Part shown: piece by piece, positions 34,158 to 47,222 of the stretch
How positions within the stretch are numbered: position 1 is the first letter of the stretch
Layout of the letters: each line of letters opens with the position of its first letter
Virus record (IMG/VR): IMGVR_UViG_3300031951_000001
Coordinates: 62,001 to 126,000 of that record
Reading direction: 5' to 3' (one strand)
DNA length: 64,000 nt
Notes under the pieces: generated by a model
What the model was told of the DNA's origin: nothing
Databases searched by the model: none
Seen by the model: the letters and a program-made list of their open reading frames with translations, nothing else
Translations under genes and position numbers: made by a program

Positions 34158-34493
34158 ATGGAACAACAAATTTATACTGTGGTAATCACATTGTTAACTG
34201 TTTTAACTTCTACCGCTGCGTGGAGGTATTATGAAAAAAGGATGGTGTTAAAGGCTAAACAAGAACAGGATGTACATAAAGATAGCGAAATGTATCGAGA
34301 TGACCTGAGAGAAAGAGTTGTTAAGTTGGAGACATTGTTAAATGAGTCGGCTAAAGAAAAAGATAAAATGAGAGAAAACATTGTATTATTGACTGCTCAA
34401 GTATCCAAATTAGAAGTGGAAGTTGAATTTTTAAGAAGGGATAACGAAAATCTTCGAGCCGAAAATCATTCATTAAGACAAAGATTGGTATAA
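34158..34493 (+). CDS. N-terminal TM plus coiled-coil protein (possibly lysis-related)
   Basis: Start reassigned to MEQQIYTVVITLLTVL; coiled coil; directly precedes the M23 gene. Confidence 0.65.
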   Translation: MEQQIYTVVITLLTVLTSTAAWRYYEKRMVLKAKQEQDVHKDSEMYRDDLRERVVKLETLLNESAKEKDKMRENIVLLTAQVSKLEVEVEFLRRDNENLRAENHSLRQRLV

Positions 34494-35215
34494 TGACAAA
34501 TTTTTCTTACATAACAAATACCTCTAAAGGTAGAATAACATCCCCTTTCGGTAATAGGGTACATCCTACATTAGGTAAGGTTAAAAAACATTCTGGATTA
34601 GATATTGCTCATCCAACAGGAACTGAAGTACTAGCAATGACCGATGGTGTTGTTATTCAAAGTGAAATGGCGAATAATGCTTGTGGTGGCACAATTGCTA
34701 TAGACCACGGAATGGTTGATGGAAAAAAACTTAAAACCAGATTTTGTCATAATAGTAAATTACTTAAAAAAGTAGGAGATAATGTTAAAAAGGGTGAGGT
34801 AATTGCAATTTCTGGAGGGGGTAAAAGTGATGTTGGTAGAGGTCGCTCAACAGGACCTCATATCCATTTTGAAGTGTATGAAAACGGTCAAACTGTAAAT
34901 CCAAAACCGTATTATGAGGGTTCATCAGTGGGATTAAAATCTGATAGTGAAACTACAACCGATTCAGATACCACAACTGAACCAACCAAACCAATTACCT
35001 CACAATCGAGTGATGAAGATATTGAAAATTTTATAAAATATTTGATTGGTGGTAAGGACATGACAATCGCTCAAAAAAACAAAGCTTTGATGCCACTTGT
35101 TAAACAATTATCACCAGGATTGGCGGATATTTTAAGTTCAGCAATACAAAATGAATCAACGGAATATGTTACAAAATTGACCGAAGATATAAAAAGAATA
35201 AAAAATTTACTTTAA
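34493..35215 (+). CDS. M23 family peptidase
   Basis: ITSPFG.R.HP, HSGLD, STGPHIHFEV, VNP; ends LTEDIKRIKNLL. Confidence 0.9.
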   Translation: MTNFSYITNTSKGRITSPFGNRVHPTLGKVKKHSGLDIAHPTGTEVLAMTDGVVIQSEMANNACGGTIAIDHGMVDGKKLKTRFCHNSKLLKKVGDNVKKGEVIAISGGGKSDVGRGRSTGPHIHFEVYENGQTVNPKPYYEGSSVGLKSDSETTTDSDTTTEPTKPITSQSSDEDIENFIKYLIGGKDMTIAQKNKALMPLVKQLSPGLADILSSAIQNESTEYVTKLTEDIKRIKNLL

Positions 35216-35216
35216 T

Positions 35217-35786
35217 ATGGACTATTTTTCACCAGTAAACGGAGTAGAAGCCGAAGAAAAAACGTTTTCAAAAACAGTAGAATTTAATCCAAGGTCCGAA
35301 AGTACTATACTATCTCCTGTAGACGGAACAGTAATAGACAAAAGAGGTGAAAGTATTAAAATAGAAGGTGATGATGGACATATACTAACTTTTGATAAAG
35401 TTGGTAGAGCGTCGGTCACAAATGGAAGCAGAGTTTTTAAAAAAAGAACTGTAGTAGGATATACCAAATCAGACGATGCTCTTGAGCTTACAATTTTTAA
35501 TGACAAAAATTCTAAAGTGGATGTAAAAAAATATCTAAAAGGTGAAATCGCACCAATTACTACAGGAAATGATAAGACAGGTTCATCGACTGGTAGTAAA
35601 TTATATAAAAGTACAAATGTTACTGATGGTAAAAAAATAAGTGACTACGCTTTAGTACGAGGAGTTGTAAAAGACGTGGCACTGGCCCCATTTACCGCAT
35701 TCCAAGCTCTAACAAAAGAAAGTGTTGAGGAGTCGGAAAAAATCTTAAAGGAACAAGTCGAGAGAATCAAACAATTGATGAAATAA
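35217..35786 (+). CDS. degenerate M23-like protein
   Basis: ILSPVDGTV scaffold without zinc His ligands; ends LKEQVERIKQLMK. Confidence 0.55.
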   Translation: MDYFSPVNGVEAEEKTFSKTVEFNPRSESTILSPVDGTVIDKRGESIKIEGDDGHILTFDKVGRASVTNGSRVFKKRTVVGYTKSDDALELTIFNDKNSKVDVKKYLKGEIAPITTGNDKTGSSTGSKLYKSTNVTDGKKISDYALVRGVVKDVALAPFTAFQALTKESVEESEKILKEQVERIKQLMK

Positions 35787-36079: not shown

Positions 36080-36925
36080 ATTATCCATCAGGATGTTGAT
36101 GATGAGACCTTAGGGTTGATTCTGAGACAACTGTAAAAGATAATGGGCCGTGTATGGTCCTTAAATAAACTACGAAAGTAGGATAAAGTGACCTCCCCCG
36201 TGTTGAGGAGGTTGCGGTTTCGAAAGGAACTCGAGTACACAAGTGGGATATCACAAGACCTTTAGTACCGAGGGTAACACTGTAGGGAAAGTGGTCAGGT
36301 GACTTGGCAAAGTGGATTGTCAAGTTGAGGTGGGAACACCAACAAGAATAACCCATAGGAATCAAGTAAGAAATGTGGCTTCCAACTACAATATTGCGGA
36401 TTCCAATACAGAAGGGTACTTAAAACCGAAAGGTAAGGTAGAGAACGAGTGGTGTCGCTACTACCCCTAAGGAAGACCTACCAAGGTCTCTTTATGAAGT
36501 AATCTGAAAGTATGGAGATAGGGATATCTCACGGAGTAGTTTAGTATTCTGTCGCTCAAAAGGAGACGGAACTTACGGTGGACCACTACTCTGACACATC
36601 CACGACACAATCTTAAATTATTAAAAAATAATTAAAGGAAAAGTGTCCATCAGGTTTAAGTGAAAGGTCACTACCTAATCACTGGCTGTCAGTGGTACAG
36701 AAAGACCCCAAGTCCGACTGTAGTTTTACGAAAAACCTTTAATCCCGCAAGGATGAACTGGGGTGGCAACCTCGGAAAGAGTTAAGTAATAAGAGAGTAA
36801 CTTAAACCTCAAGGAGTGGTAAACCTAAAAGACCGTGACTGAGAAATACTTCTCAAAAGGAAGTGGATACGAAGGGAAACAATAATCCTTCAAAAGGTTC
36901 TCACAGAAAGCTGTAATCTCAGGCT
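36080..36925 (+). ncRNA. giant structured RNA, probably GOLLD
   Basis: About 845 nt, GC-richer than its flanks, many GNRA-capped hairpins, no credible ORF, directly upstream of a tRNA in a phage; family call from size and context only. Confidence 0.65.
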
Positions 36926-36941
36926 TCGTTTAATCTTACAT

Positions 36942-37014
36942 CGCAACTTAGAGCAGAGGCCAGCTCGTCAGGCTCATAACCTGAAGGTCGGAGGTTCGAA
37001 TCCTTCAGTTGCAA
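36942..37014 (+). tRNA. initiator-type tRNA-fMet(CAT)
   Basis: C1-A72 mismatch; anticodon arm TCAGG-CTCATAA-CCTGA; T-arm GGAGG-TTCGAAT-CCTTC. Confidence 0.85.
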
Positions 37015-37099
37015 CAAATTTACAGGTGAGCTTGTCTCACCTTTTTTTATTCTTATATTTCTTATACCATTCAGGTATAAACAATAATTCTTTTATTTT

Positions 37100-38519: not shown

Positions 38520-38550
38520 AAAGAAAACCCCTCCGAGTGAGGGGTTTTTT
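38517..38550 (+). repeat. 34-bp direct repeat, copy 2 (terminator between the GT and tmRNA)
   Basis: Identical to 37397-37430. Confidence 0.9.
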
Positions 38551-38557
38551 CTTACGG

Positions 38558-38932
38558 TGGAGGTACGGGGAGTCGAACCCCTTCCTACTCATCTTAACTA
38601 CTAAGCCCTACATGTTTAGGTCAACATCGCTTCTCAATGTTCCGAAATATTGGTTTTTGAGCTCTCAAAACCACAAACGAGTTGTGTTTCTTTTCGGGTA
38701 GAAACCACACCACAGTACGAGCTTCTGTTCCAAGGTTGTATGCTTACCGACCCGTTTTGTATCCCAATCCTAGATTAGGCTACTGAAATGTTCTCTTCAG
38801 TACGGATAAGACCAACTGCAGAGAGTTTGTTGATAACGTTGCCGTTTATCGTGTGAACCAGTTTTACAAGGTTAGTTCAGCCTCGACATGCTCCGAGTAA
38901 TTAACTATGCTAGTCAATTCCAAGTTACCCCC
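38558..38932 (-). ncRNA. ssrA: tmRNA
   Basis: 5' GGGGGTAACTTGGAATTGAC; 3' GGTTCGACTCCCCGTACCTCCA with G3-U70; tag frame 38843-38775 after ATAAAC. Confidence 0.93.
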
Positions 38933-39005
38933 ATATTTCAAATAACGTTCTACAAATATATACATAGTTTATTGGTAATCCAAGTATTTATATAAAAAGT
39001 TTTTA

Positions 39006-40109: not shown

Positions 40110-40934
40110 ATGACAAGAGACCTAAATTTACTTAAATCAGTTTTATCTGTGCCAACCAAAACTTATCAAGAGGAATTGATGATTGAGTTTTTGATTGATT
40201 GGTTAGAACGAAACAACATTGAATATTCGGTAGACGAACATTGGAATGTTTATGCGACCAAAGGTGAAGTTGATGAGCATTCTTACTATCCTTGCGTTGT
40301 TGCTCACACAGATACCGTACATAACATTGATGTAATCAATATACGTGAGGAGGAATTAAAGAACGCACAAGGTCAGATTCGACCATCTTTGAAGGCGTAT
40401 AATGACTTTGGAAAACCAACTGGTATTGGTGGTGATAATAAGTGTGGAGTTTTTGCTTGTTTGGAATTGTTAAAAGAACTTCCCGTATTAAAGGCGGCAT
40501 TTTTTGTATCAGAAGAAACAGGTTGTCACGGCTCAAGAAAGGCGGACCCAAATTTCTTTGAAAACGTAGGATACGCAATTCAATTCGATGCTCCATTCAA
40601 TTGGATGGTCACTGAATACAGCATGGGAGTTAAATTGTTTGATAAGTCAGACGATTTCTTCAAGAAATGTGATGAAGTCCTGAATGAATCATTTGAAGGA
40701 CGACAAAAATATGGGTCACACCCATACACCGATGTATATGCCTTGAGAAGCAAGTTTGATTTTTCTTGTATCAATATCTCAATCGGATATTATGATTATC
40801 ACACACCTGAAGAATATGTTGTAATCGAAGATGTATTCAGTGGAATTGATGCTGGTAAAAAAATGATTGAAAAATTGGGTAACAAAAAACACAAGGCCTC
40901 AATTGTAAAAGAAAAACAATTTTTGCTTTTTTAG
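40110..40934 (+). CDS. M20/M28-clan zinc peptidase-like protein
   Basis: VAHTDTVH, GGDNKCG, SEETGC, QFD, GYYDYHT.EE. Confidence 0.8.
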   Translation: MTRDLNLLKSVLSVPTKTYQEELMIEFLIDWLERNNIEYSVDEHWNVYATKGEVDEHSYYPCVVAHTDTVHNIDVINIREEELKNAQGQIRPSLKAYNDFGKPTGIGGDNKCGVFACLELLKELPVLKAAFFVSEETGCHGSRKADPNFFENVGYAIQFDAPFNWMVTEYSMGVKLFDKSDDFFKKCDEVLNESFEGRQKYGSHPYTDVYALRSKFDFSCINISIGYYDYHTPEEYVVIEDVFSGIDAGKKMIEKLGNKKHKASIVKEKQFLLF

Positions 40935-41358: not shown

Positions 41359-43389
41359 TTATGACCCCTTCTTCTTTCTTACCTTTTTAGTCTCGATAAT
41401 TTTGACATTACCTTCTTCCGCGACTAACTCATATTCCTTTTCTTCGGATATGTTTCCTTTTAATACTTCTTCAGAAATATAATCTTCTATTTTATCTTGG
41501 ATTGCCCTTTTAAGTGGACGAGCTCCATATGTTTCATCAAAACCAACTTCAGATATTAAATCGATAATTGAATCCGTGAAATTAATTTGATATTTCAAAC
41601 CACTTAATCTTTTAGATAATTTATTCAATTCAATTTTAACAATCTCGGCAATTTGTTCTTTCTTGAGATTATTGAAGACAATTATTTCATCGATTCGGTT
41701 AAGGAATTCAGGTGCGAAGAATTTCTTCAATTCTTTTTTCAATATATCCCTTTTGTATTCTTCTTCAATGTACGTATTTGTTCCAGATTTAAATCCAATC
41801 CCCGTACCAAAATCTTGTAACATTTTAGCCCCAATGTTTGAGGTCATAATAATGACACAATTCTTGAAGTTGATTTTTCTACCCAAACCATCGGTGATAT
41901 GACCATCATCCAATACTTGTAACAGTGCTGAAAAAATATCTTTGTTTGCCTTTTCAATTTCGTCAAACAATACCACAGAATAAGGTTTGTTTTTCACTTG
42001 TTCTGTAAGTTGTCCTCCTTCATCATAACCAACATATCCGGGAGGAGCTCCAATCAAACGAGAGATTGTATGTTTTTCTTGGAATTCAGACATATCAACT
42101 CTGATAAGGCTGTCCTCACTACCAAATATTTCTTTGGCAAGTTGTTTTGCGAGTAATGTTTTACCAACACCAGTAGAGCCCAAGAATATAAATGACCCAA
42201 TTGGTTTGTTAGGGTCCTTGATACCCAAACGATTTCTTCTGATTGATTTTGAAATTTTGATTACCGCTTCTTCTTGACCAATAACTTTTCCTGAAAGATT
42301 TTTCTCTAATTCTGTCAGTAATTTTGTTTCATCGGAGTTTAGTTTTGAGATTGGAATTTTGGTCATATTTGATACAACCTCATATACCAATTCTTCGGTC
42401 ACATCTCGTTTTGATAACAACAAATCACTCTCAAATTTCTTTTTCTCATCTTCAAGTTTTGATAGGATTTTCTTTTCCTTATCTCTCAAATTTGCGGCTT
42501 CCTCATAGTTTTGTTTTTTAACAACATCTAACTTTTGTTGTTTAATATCTTGAGCCTGCTTCTTCAAATCATCAATAATCTCCGGCATCTTAATCTCAAC
42601 TTGACTACGAGCACCAACTTCATCAATGATGTCAAAGGCTTTATCAGGAAACTCACGGTCTGTAATATATCGTTCGGCCAAATCAACGCACAAACTTAAA
42701 ATTGGGTCTGAATATGATACTTTGTGATATGTTTCATATTTGTCCTTTGTATTTTTTAGAATTTGAAGTGTTTCGGCCTTTGTTGCGGCATCCACGACAA
42801 CCTTTTGGAAACGACGCTCAAGGGCCCCATCCTTTTCAAAGTTTTTACGATATTCATCATTGGTTGTTGCCCCAACACATTGAATTTCTCCACGAGCAAG
42901 TGCCGGTTTGAAGATATTGGAAGCATCTAATGACCCCGACGAGTTACCGGCTCCTACAATAGTGTGAATTTCGTCAATGAAGACAATAATATTTGGATTA
43001 CTTTGTAACTCCTCAATAATCACCTTCATACGTTCTTCAAACTGACCACGATACTTTGTACCGGCAACAATTGAAGTCATATCTAAAGATACAATTCTTT
43101 TGTCCTGTAGATTTCTTGGGCAATCTCCTTCAAAGATTTTAATTGCTAATCCTTCGACAATTGCGGTTTTACCACAACCTGGCTCACCAATGATAATTGG
43201 ATTGTTCTTTTTTCTTCTTGAAAGAATTTGAGCTATCCTTGTTATTTCTCGTTCTCTACCGACCACAGGGTCAATTTTACCTTGTTCTGCAAGTTTAATT
43301 AAATCCCTACTAAAATTATCTAGTACAGGGGTACCACTATCACTAGTTTGTTTTGATTTTTTTCCATCATTATCCGCAGATTCTATCAT
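41359..43389 (-). CDS. ClpC/ClpB-family AAA+ ATPase lacking the Clp N-domain
   Basis: Walker A GEPGCGKT and GSTGVGKT; FIDEIH; UVR-like YEEAANLRD; GAPPGYVGY; GARPL. Confidence 0.93.
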   Translation of the reverse strand: MIESADNDGKKSKQTSDSGTPVLDNFSRDLIKLAEQGKIDPVVGREREITRIAQILSRRKKNNPIIIGEPGCGKTAIVEGLAIKIFEGDCPRNLQDKRIVSLDMTSIVAGTKYRGQFEERMKVIIEELQSNPNIIVFIDEIHTIVGAGNSSGSLDASNIFKPALARGEIQCVGATTNDEYRKNFEKDGALERRFQKVVVDAATKAETLQILKNTKDKYETYHKVSYSDPILSLCVDLAERYITDREFPDKAFDIIDEVGARSQVEIKMPEIIDDLKKQAQDIKQQKLDVVKKQNYEEAANLRDKEKKILSKLEDEKKKFESDLLLSKRDVTEELVYEVVSNMTKIPISKLNSDETKLLTELEKNLSGKVIGQEEAVIKISKSIRRNRLGIKDPNKPIGSFIFLGSTGVGKTLLAKQLAKEIFGSEDSLIRVDMSEFQEKHTISRLIGAPPGYVGYDEGGQLTEQVKNKPYSVVLFDEIEKANKDIFSALLQVLDDGHITDGLGRKINFKNCVIIMTSNIGAKMLQDFGTGIGFKSGTNTYIEEEYKRDILKKELKKFFAPEFLNRIDEIIVFNNLKKEQIAEIVKIELNKLSKRLSGLKYQINFTDSIIDLISEVGFDETYGARPLKRAIQDKIEDYISEEVLKGNISEEKEYELVAEEGNVKIIETKKVRKKKGS

Positions 43390-43436
43390 AACTGTTTTTT
43401 TTCTAATAATAACCATTATTTTTTAAAAAAAAAGTT

Positions 43437-43679: not shown

Positions 43680-43709
43680 CAATTAACTCAACTCAAATAT
43701 TTATGAGTG

Positions 43710-45923
43710 ATGAGTAATTTAAAAAAGATTTTATCAAGTTTTAAGGTTAGAGAATCTTTAAATCCTAAAATTTGGAAAAAAATTGATGGTACGGTTAAAA
43801 TGAATCCAGAAGTTAGGGCAGCCCTTTTGGATATTGCTAATGATTTTATAGAGTACCTTAAAGTTGAAATTGTGGTTACGGATGTAATCATGACGGGGTC
43901 TTTGGCTAATTTTAATTGGTCAAGTTTCTCTGATATTGATTTACACATAGTTGCTGATTTCAGTCAATTTCCTGAAGAACAATTGGACCTTTACAAAGAA
44001 CTTTTTAATCTAAAAAAAACTTTATACAACGACAAACATGATATAACTATTTTTGGTTATGACGTTGAGTTATATGTTCAGAACGAAACCGAATCTCACT
44101 TTAGTAGTGGAGTTTATTCCGTTTTATTTGATGAGTGGTCAAACAAACCAAAAAAAGAAAATGTAAAAATTGATACATCATTGATTAAAACAAAAACAAA
44201 TCAATGGATGGATATTATCGATGGAGTTATTGAGAATGTATCTGACGAACCGATTGATAAGGCAAAACAAATCATCAAAAAATATAAAGACAAACTTAAA
44301 AAATATAGAACTTGCGGTCTTGAAAAACAGGGTGAATATTCTGATGAAAATCTAGTCTTTAAGGCTTTAAGAAGAAATGGGTATATTGAAAAATTACACA
44401 GTTTTGAAGACAAACTTATCGACAAAACTTACACTCTAAAAGAGGCTTCCACATCGATTGGAGGACCATTCAAAACAGATATTGAGAATGGTCCATCAAA
44501 TCACTCCAAAAGAGCATTTGGTAATTGGCAGTCAGATAACGCTTGGGACATATTTGCCCCTCCTGGTAGTGTGGTAAATTCTTACACTGAAGGTAAAGTG
44601 ACTAAAATAAGAAATACTAATAAAAGGTCAGGAAAAGTTTTCGGAACCCAAGTTAGTATTAAAGGCACTGGAGAATATCCTGATATATTTTACACTCACT
44701 TAAAGAATGTAAAACTTAAACCTGGTGATACAGTAAGATTAGGTGATTATATTGGTGAAGTCACAGAATGGTGTAAGGACGAATCATGTAAGGAAATGCA
44801 TGGAGGAACTCACGTACATTTAGGACTTCCAAAAGGAAGACATTTAAGAGAGTTACTTACTAATTCTGATAAAATATTTACGGGAAGCGAGTCTTCATCA
44901 CCATCGAAGGAAGATTCCACCGGACTAGAAATAACACCATCAAAAGAATTATCTGGAACTGAGGAAGTAAATTTTGAAAATTTTGTAGATAAGTTATCTC
45001 AACTGAAAAATTTAATCAAACCTCTAAAAAACCTAAAATCTGAGGGGTCATCGATACCATTTGATTCAAACGTTGAAACATTACAAACCGCTTTACAAAT
45101 TTTAGGTTTTTCACTGCCAAAATGGGGTGTGGATGGTAAGTTTGGTAATGAAACAGAAGCGGCTGTTAAAAAATATCAACAGTCCATTGGGTTAGAAGAA
45201 ACAGGAATAATATCACCATATGATATTGAAAAATTGGTTTCTTTGGTATCGACTACAATAGAAAAGAATCCAGATGCGGTTGGTGATGTACAAAAAACTA
45301 AGGTGGAAACTATGCCTGATGGGCCAAAACCGAATGAAATGTCACCTTCTGAAGTATCATCTACTTCAGATAATGAGTATGCGATAATTAGACCTAATGG
45401 ATACAAAGGAAATAGAGTTCACGTATTATTTGGAGGTGCTCACACTTCAGGTTATTCCCCAAATAGTGCTAAACCACAAAATATTAGAAAATATATTGGT
45501 GTAATGACACCTTATGCAAATAATATTATTATTGTTGTAACTCATCACCAAAACACTTTGGCAAATGTTAGACAATATGTTAAAGAAAAATTTGGTGGAA
45601 TTGTTACGTCTATCGCCGGATTTTCACAAGGAGGCAAGGAAGCTTGGGAACATGCTGACGACAGTACTTTGAGTTTGGTTGGTTTGATTGACCCATCAAC
45701 TTATGAGACAGGTTTAACTTTTGGTTCAAATACTATTCTTTATTGTGACCCTAAAAATTGGGGAACTTCAGGTTTTTATGGTCAAACTAGAAAAAGACTT
45801 GAATGGTATTGTGCGAACAAAAATCAATATGCTGGGCGAGTAGTATGCTTCAATAAAGGAGGTACTCACATGAATTTCGAGATATTAAAATCTTTTTACA
45901 GTCAATACGGAGGTAAGATGTAA
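43710..45923 (+). CDS. multidomain fusion: nucleotidyltransferase + M23-like + PG-binding + alpha/beta hydrolase
   Basis: GSLANFNWSSFSDIDLH; FYTHL..THVHLG; LQTALQILG..VDGKFGNETEAAVKKYQ; AGFSQGG. Confidence 0.75.
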   Translation: MSNLKKILSSFKVRESLNPKIWKKIDGTVKMNPEVRAALLDIANDFIEYLKVEIVVTDVIMTGSLANFNWSSFSDIDLHIVADFSQFPEEQLDLYKELFNLKKTLYNDKHDITIFGYDVELYVQNETESHFSSGVYSVLFDEWSNKPKKENVKIDTSLIKTKTNQWMDIIDGVIENVSDEPIDKAKQIIKKYKDKLKKYRTCGLEKQGEYSDENLVFKALRRNGYIEKLHSFEDKLIDKTYTLKEASTSIGGPFKTDIENGPSNHSKRAFGNWQSDNAWDIFAPPGSVVNSYTEGKVTKIRNTNKRSGKVFGTQVSIKGTGEYPDIFYTHLKNVKLKPGDTVRLGDYIGEVTEWCKDESCKEMHGGTHVHLGLPKGRHLRELLTNSDKIFTGSESSSPSKEDSTGLEITPSKELSGTEEVNFENFVDKLSQLKNLIKPLKNLKSEGSSIPFDSNVETLQTALQILGFSLPKWGVDGKFGNETEAAVKKYQQSIGLEETGIISPYDIEKLVSLVSTTIEKNPDAVGDVQKTKVETMPDGPKPNEMSPSEVSSTSDNEYAIIRPNGYKGNRVHVLFGGAHTSGYSPNSAKPQNIRKYIGVMTPYANNIIIVVTHHQNTLANVRQYVKEKFGGIVTSIAGFSQGGKEAWEHADDSTLSLVGLIDPSTYETGLTFGSNTILYCDPKNWGTSGFYGQTRKRLEWYCANKNQYAGRVVCFNKGGTHMNFEILKSFYSQYGGKM

Positions 45924-45980: not shown

Positions 45981-47222
45981 ATGGGAAAATTAAAGCCTAT
46001 TGGAAGTGAAAAACTTCAGGGTATGGACAAAATCAATCGTATGATTGAGATTGCTAGATACAAAGAAAACATACCAAATCCAATCAATGAAGATGCTTCT
46101 GTTGAGTACAAAAAAGTTTTACCTGACGGACATACTTACCGAATTGATAAGGAGAAGAATGGTTATGTAATCGTTAAAGGACTTAATGAGTCTGAAATGG
46201 ATTATATTGAACCAATGAAAAATAGAAAATATTATTCTTCATACTCGCAAGCATTCAAGAGATTGAACTTAATCACCAAAGAAGTTAATAGTTTGGTGGG
46301 TAACGAAAAAAATGTTTCATTGTTCAATGAAGGTGATGAGAAGAAGGATAAAACAAAATATTTCCTGAAAATGGAACAAGCTCCTCCCACCGCGGCTCCC
46401 GCACCGGCACCTGCTCCGGCACCTGCTCCGGCGCCTGCGGAAGTACCGGCTGAAGAACCAGCTCCTGAAATGCCAGAGGAACCAATGGAACCTGAAATGG
46501 ATGCGGAGACTGAAATGGGTGATGAACAAGATGAAGAGATTGTAACTTTCAAAACCATTCAGAAATTAACAGGTAAGTTGGCTCAAAAAATTAGAACACT
46601 TGCGGCTGACGAGGAAAACCCAATGTCATCAAAAGACATTAAGTATGTAATTAATTCTGTTTTATCAGCATTTGATTTGAATTTATTGGATGAAGAAGAC
46701 AGAGATGAAATCATGGGTAAATTCGAAGGTGAAGAAATGGCAGGTGATGAGATGGGAATGGAAGATATGGGTGATATGGGTGATGAAGAAATGCCTGCGG
46801 ATGAAATGGGGGCTGAAGAAATACCTGCGGAAATGATGGAGATGTTTGATGAATATGAATCAGAAGCTCCTGAAGAACCAAGAATGGCTAAAATCAAAGG
46901 TCTTGATGACAAACATTCGTTTGGGGTTGAGGACATGATTGAAGGTTTGTTTAGTGAGTCGAAAGTTGACCAAATCCTGAAAAAATATTTCAATGTAAGT
47001 GAAACTGAAAAAGTAATCACTGAACAAAAGAAAGATAGAAAAAAAGAAATGATTTGGAAAATTAATCAGTTGAGTGAAAATGTGGAACAAGAAGTTATCT
47101 CACGTAAATTGATTAACAAATTTTCTGACGCTAAATTACTTGGCAGAACAAAGAAAAAAGATTTAGTTTTTGAAATAAATGAATCAAAAGTTAGAGTAAC
47201 CCCAAAAGGTGAAATTCTATGA
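45981..47222 (+). CDS. acidic hypothetical protein with Pro-Ala linker
   Basis: 413 aa; (PA)n and E/M/D-rich tracts; several INE/LNE/ITE/LSE motifs. Confidence 0.7.
   Translation: MGKLKPIGSEKLQGMDKINRMIEIARYKENIPNPINEDASVEYKKVLPDGHTYRIDKEKNGYVIVKGLNESEMDYIEPMKNRKYYSSYSQAFKRLNLITKEVNSLVGNEKNVSLFNEGDEKKDKTKYFLKMEQAPPTAAPAPAPAPAPAPAPAEVPAEEPAPEMPEEPMEPEMDAETEMGDEQDEEIVTFKTIQKLTGKLAQKIRTLAADEENPMSSKDIKYVINSVLSAFDLNLLDEEDRDEIMGKFEGEEMAGDEMGMEDMGDMGDEEMPADEMGAEEIPAEMMEMFDEYESEAPEEPRMAKIKGLDDKHSFGVEDMIEGLFSESKVDQILKKYFNVSETEKVITEQKKDRKKEMIWKINQLSENVEQEVISRKLINKFSDAKLLGRTKKKDLVFEINESKVRVTPKGEIL

What the first reader, a model, noticed from the sequence alone, without database searches (positions are those of the whole stretch)
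38558..38932. Phage tmRNA with a long, atypical tag
Seen: the predicted tag (A)GNVINKLSAVGLIRTEENISVA has 22 encoded residues and ends SVA; the gene ends CCG rather than CCA. Known: typical tags are about 10 residues ending in ALAA-like degrons read by ClpXP. Inference: rescued proteins are routed differently, either spared or sent to the phage Clp ATPase encoded 2.4 kb away.
Basis: partly seen in the sequence, partly recalled or inferred. Interest (0 to 1): 0.6.

Follow-up and report, generated by a model that had tools for sequence, protein, structure and literature searches.

The report
Phage tmRNA with conserved double-length tag
A 322-kb phage carries its own ribosome-rescue RNA (tmRNA) and partner protein SmpB, and the peptide tag it encodes is twice the usual length and conserved across many related phages, but its end still resembles an ordinary degradation signal, so nothing here shows a special fate for tagged proteins.

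Summary
A full-length one-piece tmRNA lies on the minus strand at 38932..38555 (Rfam 94.6 bits). Its tag frame reads GNVINKLSAVGLIRTEENISVA-stop, and CCG stands where CCA is expected.

The resume codon is secure:
- Rfam and relaxed ARAGORN agree on it.
- U85/A86 upstream are invariant.
- All 45 unique relatives keep one open 21-22-codon frame, with pN/pS 0.45 against 0.92 and 1.66 in the other frames.

The tag is about twice as long as the 8-10-residue tags in a sample of the likely host phylum, Bacteroidota. That host call rests on a conserved TAnnTTTG promoter.

The phage also encodes SmpB, but no ClpP, ClpX, Lon, SspB or CCA-adding enzyme.

The two "atypical" cues are weak:
- CCA is encoded in only 18 of 43 relatives, and the literature says it is often not encoded.
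- A published ...LVA tag is degraded by E. coli ClpXP about as well as YALAA, and some relatives end in VAA.

The nearby ClpC-like ATPase lacks the N-domain, keeps an IGF loop, and is syntenic in every locus with room. All those loci belong to one phage lineage, so this shows no functional link.

Long odd tags are already known on phage tmRNAs (Bxz1, phage G). This is a new member of a known kind.

The parts
38555..38932 (-). One-piece tmRNA gene (378 nt, counting the three CCA-equivalent positions, which read CCG)
   Evidence: Rfam RF00023, 94.6 bits, model 1-374. ARAGORN -ps. 28 of 43 predicted pairs show compensatory changes among 43 relatives, and G3:U70 is kept in 43 of 43.
38905..38932 (-). 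5' half of the tRNA-like domain (acceptor strand GGGGGUA with G3, D-loop analogue)
   Evidence: ARAGORN 5' tRNA domain 1-28. Acceptor pairs covary: GC<->AU and UA<->CG.
38854..38885 (-). Pseudoknot PK1 (stems CGAGG/CCUUG and UGAAC/GUUCA), just upstream of the resume codon
   Evidence: Aligned to the Rfam PK1 positions with high posterior probability. Read by eye, a second subgroup has different but self-complementary stems (AGUGA/UCACU; GUUUCC/GGAAAC). No formal pair count was made.
38775..38843 (-). Tag reading frame: resume codon GGC, 22 codons (GNVINKLSAVGLIRTEENISVA), stop TAA
   Evidence: U85 and A86, at -5/-4 from the resume codon, are invariant in 43 sequences.
38556..38597 (-). 3' half of the tRNA-like domain (T-arm GGGGUUCGACUCCCC, acceptor strand UACCUCC, discriminator A, CC)
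   Evidence: ARAGORN 3' tRNA domain 336-377. T-stem pairs covary.
38953..38960 (-). Candidate -7 promoter box TATATTTG (Bacteroidota sigma-A type TAnnTTTG), with TTGG 20 nt further upstream at 38983..38980
   Evidence: Seen in the sequence. TAnnTTTG lies 21-35 nt upstream of the mature 5' end in 38 of 42 unique relatives. Consensus from PMC9723704. Its function is inferred.
38524..38548 (-). Intrinsic terminator hairpin followed by a T-run, 7 nt after the tmRNA 3' end
   Evidence: 10 pairs, 5 of them G-C, loop of 5, tail CTTTTT.
41359..43416 (-). ClpC-like double AAA+ unfoldase, 685 aa, without the N-terminal Clp_N domain, with a GIGF ClpP-docking loop; same strand as the tmRNA, 2.4 kb upstream
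   Evidence: Pfam AAA, AAA_lid_9, AAA_2 and ClpB_D2-small, with no Clp_N among the 25 of 35 families shown. Residues 17-662 align to S. aureus ClpC 148-792, E 1e-221, and IGF sits opposite AGF. It is the only AAA_2 protein in the genome. Its association with the tmRNA is positional only.
40110..40934 (+). Putative M20/M42-type peptidase between the ClpC-like gene and the tmRNA (context; any link is unproven)
   Evidence: phrog_4191 'peptidase', 3.2e-38. Weak Pfam M42/M20 matches below the curated cut-offs. Weak PDB match to a Xaa-His dipeptidase.

Best explanation
This is a working phage-encoded trans-translation module. A one-piece tmRNA in the window and a phage SmpB elsewhere in the same 322-kb genome (G000:C1:6823-7203) belong to a large family of roughly 310-320-kb uncultured phages that probably infect Bacteroidota.

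The steps below are inferred from what is known of the tmRNA family:
- The gene is transcribed from a host-type TAnnTTTG promoter and ends at an intrinsic terminator.
- Host enzymes trim the RNA and complete its 3' end to CCA; the phage has no CCA-adding enzyme.
- Host AlaRS charges it with alanine through G3:U70.
- Phage SmpB brings it to ribosomes stalled on broken mRNAs.

Translation then resumes at GGC and adds Ala plus 22 residues. The peptide itself is under purifying selection, so something reads it.

My preferred reading is that the tag has two parts. The C-terminal end (acidic stretch, then x-[V/A/L/T]-A-COOH) is an ssrA-like degron that host ClpXP-type machinery can take. The conserved front and middle, GN[VI][IL][ND]K[LM][SA]x[VI]GL[IV]R, is an extra determinant whose reader is unknown. 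It could serve as an adaptor or enhancer site, much as SspB binds the front of the E. coli tag.

The benefit to the phage would be extra ribosome-rescue capacity and amino-acid recycling during infection.

The confidence of 0.6 is for the whole statement. That this is a genuine, intact phage tmRNA with this tag I put at about 0.95. That the tag acts as an ssrA-like degron read by host machinery I put at about 0.55.
For: Identity and integrity:
- Full-length Rfam hit, and hits over the cut-off in 7 of 7 diverse relatives tested.
- G3:U70 kept in 43 of 43, and 28 covarying pairs.
- U85/A86 invariant.
- Phage SmpB at 112.9 bits, also present in 3 of 4 near-complete relatives.

Peptide-level selection:
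- One open frame in 45 of 45 unique sequences.
- N2, G11, L12, R14, V21 and A22 invariant, with synonymous CTT<->TTA at L12.
- pN/pS 0.45 against 0.92 and 1.66 in the other frames.

A degron-like end:
- The last residue is always Ala and the one before it is V, A, L or T.
- Some members end EDAAVAA or EDATVAA.
- FKLVA is an efficient E. coli ClpXP substrate.
- ClpX mainly reads the last residues and the alpha-carboxylate, and tags of about 20 residues are degraded.

Dependence on host enzymes: no ClpP, Lon, SspB, CCA-adding enzyme or second AAA_2 ATPase was found in the phage.

Host:
- TAnnTTTG upstream of the tmRNA in 38 of 42 relatives.
- The motif is enriched upstream of ORFs on the coding strand, 36 against 19 on the opposite strand.
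- The nearest ClpC and SmpB relatives are huge phages, including Prevotella Lak phages, and MAGs titled Bacteroidota.
Against:
- In this window the penultimate residue is Val, not Ala. In E. coli, changes at the last two alanines raise KM, so affinity for the host ClpX could be lower.
- The ClpX of the presumed host was not examined, and the host itself is inferred, not shown.
- The conserved neighbourhood (N-domain-less ClpC with an IGF loop, plus a peptidase) fits the rival 'private pathway' reading equally well.
Confidence: 0.6

Rival explanations
1. Private degradation pathway. The long tag is a degron matched to the phage's own N-domain-less ClpC-like unfoldase. That unfoldase docks on host ClpP through its IGF loop, so rescued proteins bypass or outcompete host ClpX.
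For: The ClpC-like gene lies 2.4 kb upstream on the same strand in every related locus with enough flank (65 of 80; 32 of 32). It keeps the ClpP-docking loop and lacks the adaptor-binding N-domain. The phage has no ClpP or ClpX of its own. A peptidase gene lies between the two. The conserved internal GL[IV]R motif needs a reader.
Against: All syntenic loci carry a ClpC at 78% identity or more, so they are one lineage and the synteny is inherited. Elsewhere the traits are uncoupled: Bxz1 and phage G have odd tags without a ClpC-like gene, Lak-B5 has tmRNA and SmpB without one, and LR756502 and LR756501 have one without a tmRNA over the cut-off. No binding test was possible because the tag is shorter than the complex tool's 30-residue minimum.
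Confidence: 0.15
2. Sparing. The tag only supplies a stop codon to release the ribosome, it is not a degron, and the tagged proteins persist.
For: The tag does not end in Ala-Ala in this window. Ribosome release alone is enough for many tmRNA functions (established knowledge; see the 6xHis tmRNA alleles).
Against: A mere stop-supplying frame would not keep 21-22 codons, six invariant residues and a small hydrophobic C-terminus across 45 or more variants. VA ends are good ClpXP degrons in E. coli.
Confidence: 0.1
3. The conservation reflects RNA structure, not a peptide. The 'tag' region is kept for folding (helix 5 and the hairpin at the resume codon), and the peptide sequence is incidental.
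For: A 3-bp hairpin around the resume codon covaries CG<->UA and couples the V3/I3 change to an upstream base. Part of the frame can pair with itself (codons 7-9 with 15-17; read).
Against: Third positions vary most (14/7/20). Two-step synonymous Leu changes occur, indels come in whole codons, and pN/pS is below 1 only in this frame.
Confidence: 0.05
4. Decoy or relic: an inhibitor of host trans-translation (like the domain-only RNA of phage DS6A), or a leftover attachment-site fragment of a host tmRNA gene.
For: Such phage elements are known (PMC4131195 and PMC11915505; K1 mycobacteriophages integrate into tmRNA).
Against: The gene is full length, with PK1, a tag frame and covarying helices. 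It has its own promoter, terminator and SmpB, and shares only the T-arm/acceptor end (about 25 nt; one 64-nt, 77% match) with sampled Bacteroidota tmRNAs.
Confidence: 0.03

Closest known systems
Bacterial one-piece tmRNA (SsrA, Rfam RF00023) with SmpB
   Same: Same architecture: acceptor stem with G3:U70, T-arm, long helix 2, PK1, U85/A86 before a resume codon at position 90 (the same numbering as E. coli, from my own knowledge), a short frame ending in a stop, downstream pseudoknot region, and an SmpB partner.
   Different: Carried by a phage. The tag has 21-22 coded residues, against a most frequent length of 10 and 8-10 in sampled Bacteroidota. It ends V-A rather than A-A. The Rfam score is lower than for bacterial genes (94.6 bits against 93-198). 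Default ARAGORN misses it.
Mycobacteriophage Bxz1 (cluster C1) tmRNA
   Same: A phage-borne full tmRNA with a long, non-canonical tag: ATDTDATVTDAEIEAFFAEEAAALV, 25 residues, ending LV (listed in PMC4131195).
   Different: No phage SmpB and no ClpC-like gene were found in Bxz1. The tag sequence is unrelated, the host is an actinobacterium, and the genome is 156 kb.
Bacillus phage G tmRNA
   Same: A huge-phage tmRNA whose tag also ends Q-V-A: AKLNITNNELQVA.
   Different: The tag has 13 residues. No SmpB and no ClpC-like gene were found. The host is a Firmicute.
tmRNA and SmpB of huge phages (Al-Shayeb et al. 2020; Lak phages)
   Same: Huge phages are reported to carry tmRNA and SmpB (PMC7162821). 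Lak-B5 has both. LR756501 and LR756502 have SmpB and a ClpC-like gene, and these are the nearest phage relatives of this phage's proteins.
   Different: The Lak-B5 tag is short and canonical-looking (DDEIEFRMAA, relaxed ARAGORN). The survey used ARAGORN, which calls only 5 of 43 members of this family at default settings. No tag analysis was found in that paper.
Long bacterial tags (Chlamydia, Mycoplasma)
   Same: Long tags exist in bacteria and still act as degrons. GFP carrying the chlamydial SsrA tag is degraded by chlamydial ClpX with ClpP1P2, and its VAA-to-VDD variant is not (PMC9601184). Mycoplasma tags are read by Lon (from my own knowledge).
   Different: No sequence similarity. Those are the cell's only tmRNA, whereas this one would act beside a host tmRNA that carries a short tag.
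ClpC (Bacillus, Staphylococcus, Mycobacterium ClpC1)
   Same: The neighbouring 685-aa protein aligns end to end with ClpC residues 148-792 (E 1e-221), including the UVR-like middle domain and the ClpP-binding loop.
   Different: It lacks the roughly 145-residue N-terminal domain that binds adaptors and phospho-arginine.

Membership tests
tmRNA (RF00023, one-piece) | Match to the family covariance model over its full length, above the curated score | tested here: met
   94.6 bits against 47, model 1-374, E 1.4e-35. 7 of 7 relatives score 50-105 bits.
tmRNA (RF00023, one-piece) | tRNA-like domain: 7-bp acceptor stem with G3:U70 (alanine identity) and a T-arm | tested here: met
   G3:U70 in 43 of 43. 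Acceptor and T-stem pairs kept through compensatory changes.
tmRNA (RF00023, one-piece) | Pseudoknot PK1 between helix 2 and the resume codon | tested here: met
   Aligned to the model's PK1. Two sequence subgroups have different, self-complementary stems (read by eye). No formal count, because the MAFFT alignment is out of register between the subgroups.
tmRNA (RF00023, one-piece) | Resume codon set by conserved upstream bases (U85/A86 in E. coli), followed by a short frame that ends in a stop and in non-polar residues | tested here: met
   T85 and A86 invariant in 43 sequences. The frame is open in 45 of 45 and ends V-A-stop.
tmRNA (RF00023, one-piece) | Mature 3' CCA end, alanine charging, and actual tagging | not testable with these tools
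   The gene reads CCG; relatives read CCA in 18 of 43. CCA is 'not always' encoded.
tmRNA (RF00023, one-piece) | SmpB partner available | tested here: met
   PF01668 at 112.9 bits, profile 5-138 of 143, at G000:C1:6823-7203. The ORF has a basic C-terminal tail.
Canonical ssrA degron (about 10 residues, ...ALAA) | Length about 8-12 residues | tested here: not met
   22 coded residues here, 21-22 across the family, against 8-10 in sampled Bacteroidota.
Canonical ssrA degron (about 10 residues, ...ALAA) | C-terminal Ala-Ala | tested here: not met
   V-A in the window. A minority of relatives end VAA.
Canonical ssrA degron (about 10 residues, ...ALAA) | Degraded by ClpXP | not testable with these tools
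   Indirect only: FKLVA is degraded by E. coli ClpXP much like YALAA.
ClpC-type Hsp100 unfoldase (the neighbouring gene) | Two AAA+ modules, a short UVR-like middle domain, and a ClpP-docking (I/V/A)GF loop | tested here: met
   Pfam AAA, AAA_lid_9, AAA_2 and ClpB_D2-small. Alignment to ClpC 148-792, with GIGF opposite AGF.
ClpC-type Hsp100 unfoldase (the neighbouring gene) | N-terminal Clp_N repeat domain (adaptor and phospho-arginine binding) | tested here: not met
   No Clp_N among the Pfam families shown. The alignment starts at ClpC residue 148. I therefore call it 'ClpC-like, N-domain-less'.

The most novel reading that the evidence does not exclude
The phage runs an orthogonal quality-control circuit. 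Its tmRNA writes a phage-specific 22-residue degron, and the conserved internal GL[IV]R-containing segment is read by the phage's own N-domain-less ClpC-like unfoldase (or by an unidentified phage adaptor). That unfoldase feeds host ClpP, with the adjacent peptidase completing amino-acid recycling. This would be a matched tag-and-unfoldase pair carried by a virus.
Probability: 0.12. Interest if true: 0.75.

Novelty: new member of a known kind. Interest (0 to 1): 0.4.

Why it matters
Phage tmRNAs have been catalogued but not studied functionally, as far as I could find. This family offers a clean case for experiment. It has more than a hundred natural variants of one long tag, clear invariant positions (N2, G11-L12, R14, V-A end), a phage SmpB and a nearby N-domain-less ClpC. 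A handful of reporter experiments could show whether a virus gives rescued proteins its own fate.

There is also a practical point. Default ARAGORN, the usual annotation tool, misses about 90% of this family (it of 43), so surveys of phage translation genes probably undercount tmRNAs. The conserved TAnnTTTG promoter gives a simple host-phylum clue for these uncultured phages.

Tried and rejected
- blastn of the tmRNA region against the GenBank phage collection found no match.
I tried no other route.
- The held supplement text of the tmRNA database paper has no occurrence of 'Phage' or of the two tag fragments I searched, so I could not check whether this tag is already in that database.
- Complex prediction was not run. 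The tag (22-23 residues) is under the tool's 30-residue minimum, and a ClpC hexamer exceeds the size limit.
- No covariance model was built.
- PK1 was not put through the count of structure pairs, because MAFFT places the two sequence subgroups out of register there. It was read by eye.
- PK2-PK4 were not resolved. The Rfam alignment has low posterior probability in that region.
- I considered an attP or host-tmRNA fragment and rejected it. The gene is full length, and against sampled Bacteroidota tmRNAs it matches essentially only at the 3' T-arm/acceptor end (about 25 nt; one 64-nt match at 77%).
- I considered a cyanobacterial host, because their 'ANNIV...VAA' tags look loosely similar (from memory), but found no evidence for it. 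The promoter motif and the protein relatives point to Bacteroidota.
- The large protein searches were not used, because Pfam, PHROGs and the PDB left none of the relevant proteins open.

Full report
**Where the window lies.** The window is bases 62001-126000 of a single 322,372-bp virus record from IMG/VR. CheckV rates it 100% complete, and its G+C content is 34%.

**The observation.** Rfam's tmRNA model matches the minus strand at 38932..38555 over its full length, at 94.6 bits against a gathering score of 47. Read 5'->3', the RNA starts GGGGGUAAC and ends GGGGUUCGACUCCCCGUACCUCCA-CCG.

ARAGORN at default settings reports no tmRNA here. At its relaxed threshold it reports the same gene, with the resume context GAUAAAC|GGC and the tag GNVINKLSAVGLIRTEENISVA*, flagged as a tag it does not know.

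**Is the frame real?** I fetched relatives through the neighbouring ClpC-like protein. That search gave 486 confirmed stretches in IMG/VR, of which 80 loci were kept. nhmmer found a tmRNA in 65 of the 80, about 2.4 kb downstream of the ClpC-like gene on the same strand. Most of the other 15 loci end before that point.

The 45 unique tmRNA sequences all keep one open frame of 21-22 codons at the aligned position. The other two frames carry stops in 45 and 41 of the 45.
- The only indel is one whole codon.
- Variable sites by codon position are 14/7/20.
- N2, G11, L12, R14, V21 and A22 never change, and L12 is written both CTT and TTA.
- pN/pS is 0.45 in this frame, against 0.92 and 1.66 in the others.
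- U85 and A86 are invariant. They sit at -5/-4 from the resume codon, the positions known to set the frame in E. coli (my own knowledge of Williams 1999, Lee 2001 and Miller 2008).

In the 79 new loci read, the motif is the same, and the C-terminal ends are VVA, AVA, SVA, NVA, VLA, VTA and VAA.

**Is the RNA functional?** Among 43 aligned relatives, 28 of 43 predicted pairs are kept through double changes, and G3:U70, the alanine identity pair, is present in all 43. Seven diverse relatives all pass Rfam's cut-off.

Upstream lies TATATTTG, the TAnnTTTG -7 box of Bacteroidota sigma-A promoters (PMC9723704). The motif stands 21-35 nt before the mature 5' end in 38 of 42 unique relatives, although the flanks have diverged. 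A strong intrinsic terminator follows the gene.

**The partner and the rest of the pathway.** The phage encodes SmpB outside the window (PF01668, 112.9 bits; ORF). Three of four near-complete relatives do too. I found no ClpP, Lon, SspB, CCA-adding enzyme or second AAA_2 ATPase such as ClpX in the phage. Charging, CCA completion and proteolysis must therefore use host enzymes, apart from the ClpC-like unfoldase.

**Is the tag atypical?** Yes for length and sequence. The database paper gives 10 aa as the commonest length. Host evidence is indirect but consistent:
- the TAnnTTTG promoter upstream of the tmRNA;
- enrichment of that motif upstream of crude ORFs on the coding strand, 36 against 19 on the opposite strand, with about 20 expected;
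- the nearest phage relatives of ClpC and SmpB, which are huge uncultured phages and the Prevotella Lak phages;
- the nearest bacterial ClpC hits, which are MAGs titled Bacteroidota at 57-58% identity.

In those MAGs the tags are GERNYALAA and GERNFALAA. In 50 genomes sampled across that phylum, the tags ARAGORN calls have 8-10 letters, and all but one end in AA. The phage tag would thus be about twice the length of its host's.

**Do the 'atypical' cues imply a different fate?** Not on this evidence.

First, CCG is not informative. Across 43 relatives the three positions read CCA in 18, CCG in 7 and other triplets in 18. It is known that tmRNA genes do not always encode CCA.

Second, a V-A end is a good ClpXP signal in E. 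coli. The top hit of a C-terminal pentapeptide screen was FKLVA, with a KM close to that of YALAA. From my own knowledge, the engineered 'LVA' ssrA variant is a standard fast-degradation tag (Andersen 1998). ClpX mainly reads the last residues and the free carboxylate, and it handles 20-residue degrons. Some family members end EDAAVAA or EDATVAA, which from memory looks like the end of alphaproteobacterial tags.

I therefore favour a two-part tag, with an ssrA-like C-terminal degron and a conserved front and middle whose reader is unknown.

**The Clp ATPase.** The 685-aa protein at 41359..43416 is a ClpC homologue that aligns with ClpC residues 148-792 (E 1e-221). It lacks the N-domain, keeps the UVR-like middle domain, and has GIGF where ClpC has its ClpP-docking AGF. 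A PHROG 'peptidase' with weak M20/M42 similarity lies between it and the tmRNA.

However, the synteny comes from a single phage lineage. Outside that lineage the traits separate:
- Bxz1 (25-residue tag ending LV) and phage G (tag ending QVA) have no ClpC-like gene and no SmpB.
- Lak-B5 has tmRNA and SmpB but no ClpC-like gene.
- LR756502 and LR756501 have SmpB and a ClpC-like gene but no tmRNA above Rfam's cut-off.

**Novelty.** Phage tmRNAs (PMC4131195), tmRNA plus SmpB in huge phages (PMC7162821) and long odd phage tags (Bxz1) are all on record. What is new:
- this family, with well over a hundred contigs;
- its conserved 21-22-residue tag with defined invariant positions;
- its pairing with a phage SmpB and an N-domain-less ClpC;
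- its Bacteroidota-type promoter;
- the fact that default ARAGORN sees only 5 of 43 members.

I rate it a new member of a known kind, of moderate interest. The private-pathway reading is a low-probability, high-interest possibility that simple reporter assays could settle.

**Limits.** The host is inferred. PK2-PK4 were not resolved. No RNA data could be obtained. I could not query the 97,179-sequence tmRNA database for this tag.

Noticed in passing
window 36532-36925 (+), tRNA-Met at 36942-37015 (+): A full-length GOLLD RNA (RF02032, 317 bits) is followed directly by a tRNA-Met gene, 1.6 kb from the tmRNA. GOLLD also lies next to the tmRNA in relatives L022, L026, L047 and L067. The locus holds three structured RNAs: GOLLD, a tRNA and the tmRNA.
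   Followed up: partly
window 38953-38960 (-) and the whole genome: Bacteroidota-type TAnnTTTG -7 boxes. One is conserved upstream of the tmRNA in 38 of 42 relatives. Genome-wide, 36 of 292 crude ORFs have one within 80 nt upstream on the coding strand, against 19 on the other strand, mostly 10-30 nt from the start codon. This is a host-phylum clue for an uncultured phage.
   Followed up: partly
43 unique family tmRNAs (alignment A1): Default ARAGORN calls only 5 of 43 and relaxed ARAGORN 12 of 43, while Rfam and nhmmer find them all. Surveys that rely on ARAGORN will undercount this family.
   Followed up: yes
window 38832-38845 (-); alignment A1 columns 101-110: A 3-bp hairpin, ACG(GCAA)CGU, encloses the resume codon. 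Its middle pair switches CG<->UA in 6 sequences, tying the V3/I3 change in the tag to the base at -2. It may present the resume codon, or it may be shared ancestry.
   Followed up: no
window 40110-40934 (+): A 274-aa putative metallopeptidase (phrog_4191, 3e-38; weak M42/M20 matches; weak match to Xaa-His dipeptidase 2qyv) lies between the ClpC-like gene and the tmRNA.
   Followed up: partly
G000:C1:6823-7203 (outside the window; L003 ORF 1399-1893): Phage SmpB with a lysine-rich C-terminal tail. Its Pfam score (112.9 bits) is lower than those of SmpBs in other huge phages (138-186 bits).
   Followed up: partly
LR756502.1 and LR756501.1 (loci L166, L179, L186): These 642-kb and 735-kb phages encode SmpB and a ClpC-like protein, but no tmRNA reaches Rfam's cut-off. 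LR756501 has a 21-bit match at 718388-718731. A divergent tmRNA may be hidden there.
   Followed up: no
window 43707-45923 (+): A 738-aa fusion of a nucleotidyltransferase-like N-terminus (NTP_transf_2, phrog_36119) with an M23 peptidase and a peptidoglycan-binding domain. Two more M23-like ORFs lie at 34493-35215 and 35217-35786.
   Followed up: no
window 45981-47222 (+): A 413-aa protein with a (PA)n run and long acidic Glu/Asp/Met-rich stretches, and no family match.
   Followed up: no
whole genome G000: ARAGORN finds only five tRNA genes in 322 kb (Glu, Arg, Leu, two Met). That is few for a phage that carries its own tmRNA and SmpB.
   Followed up: no
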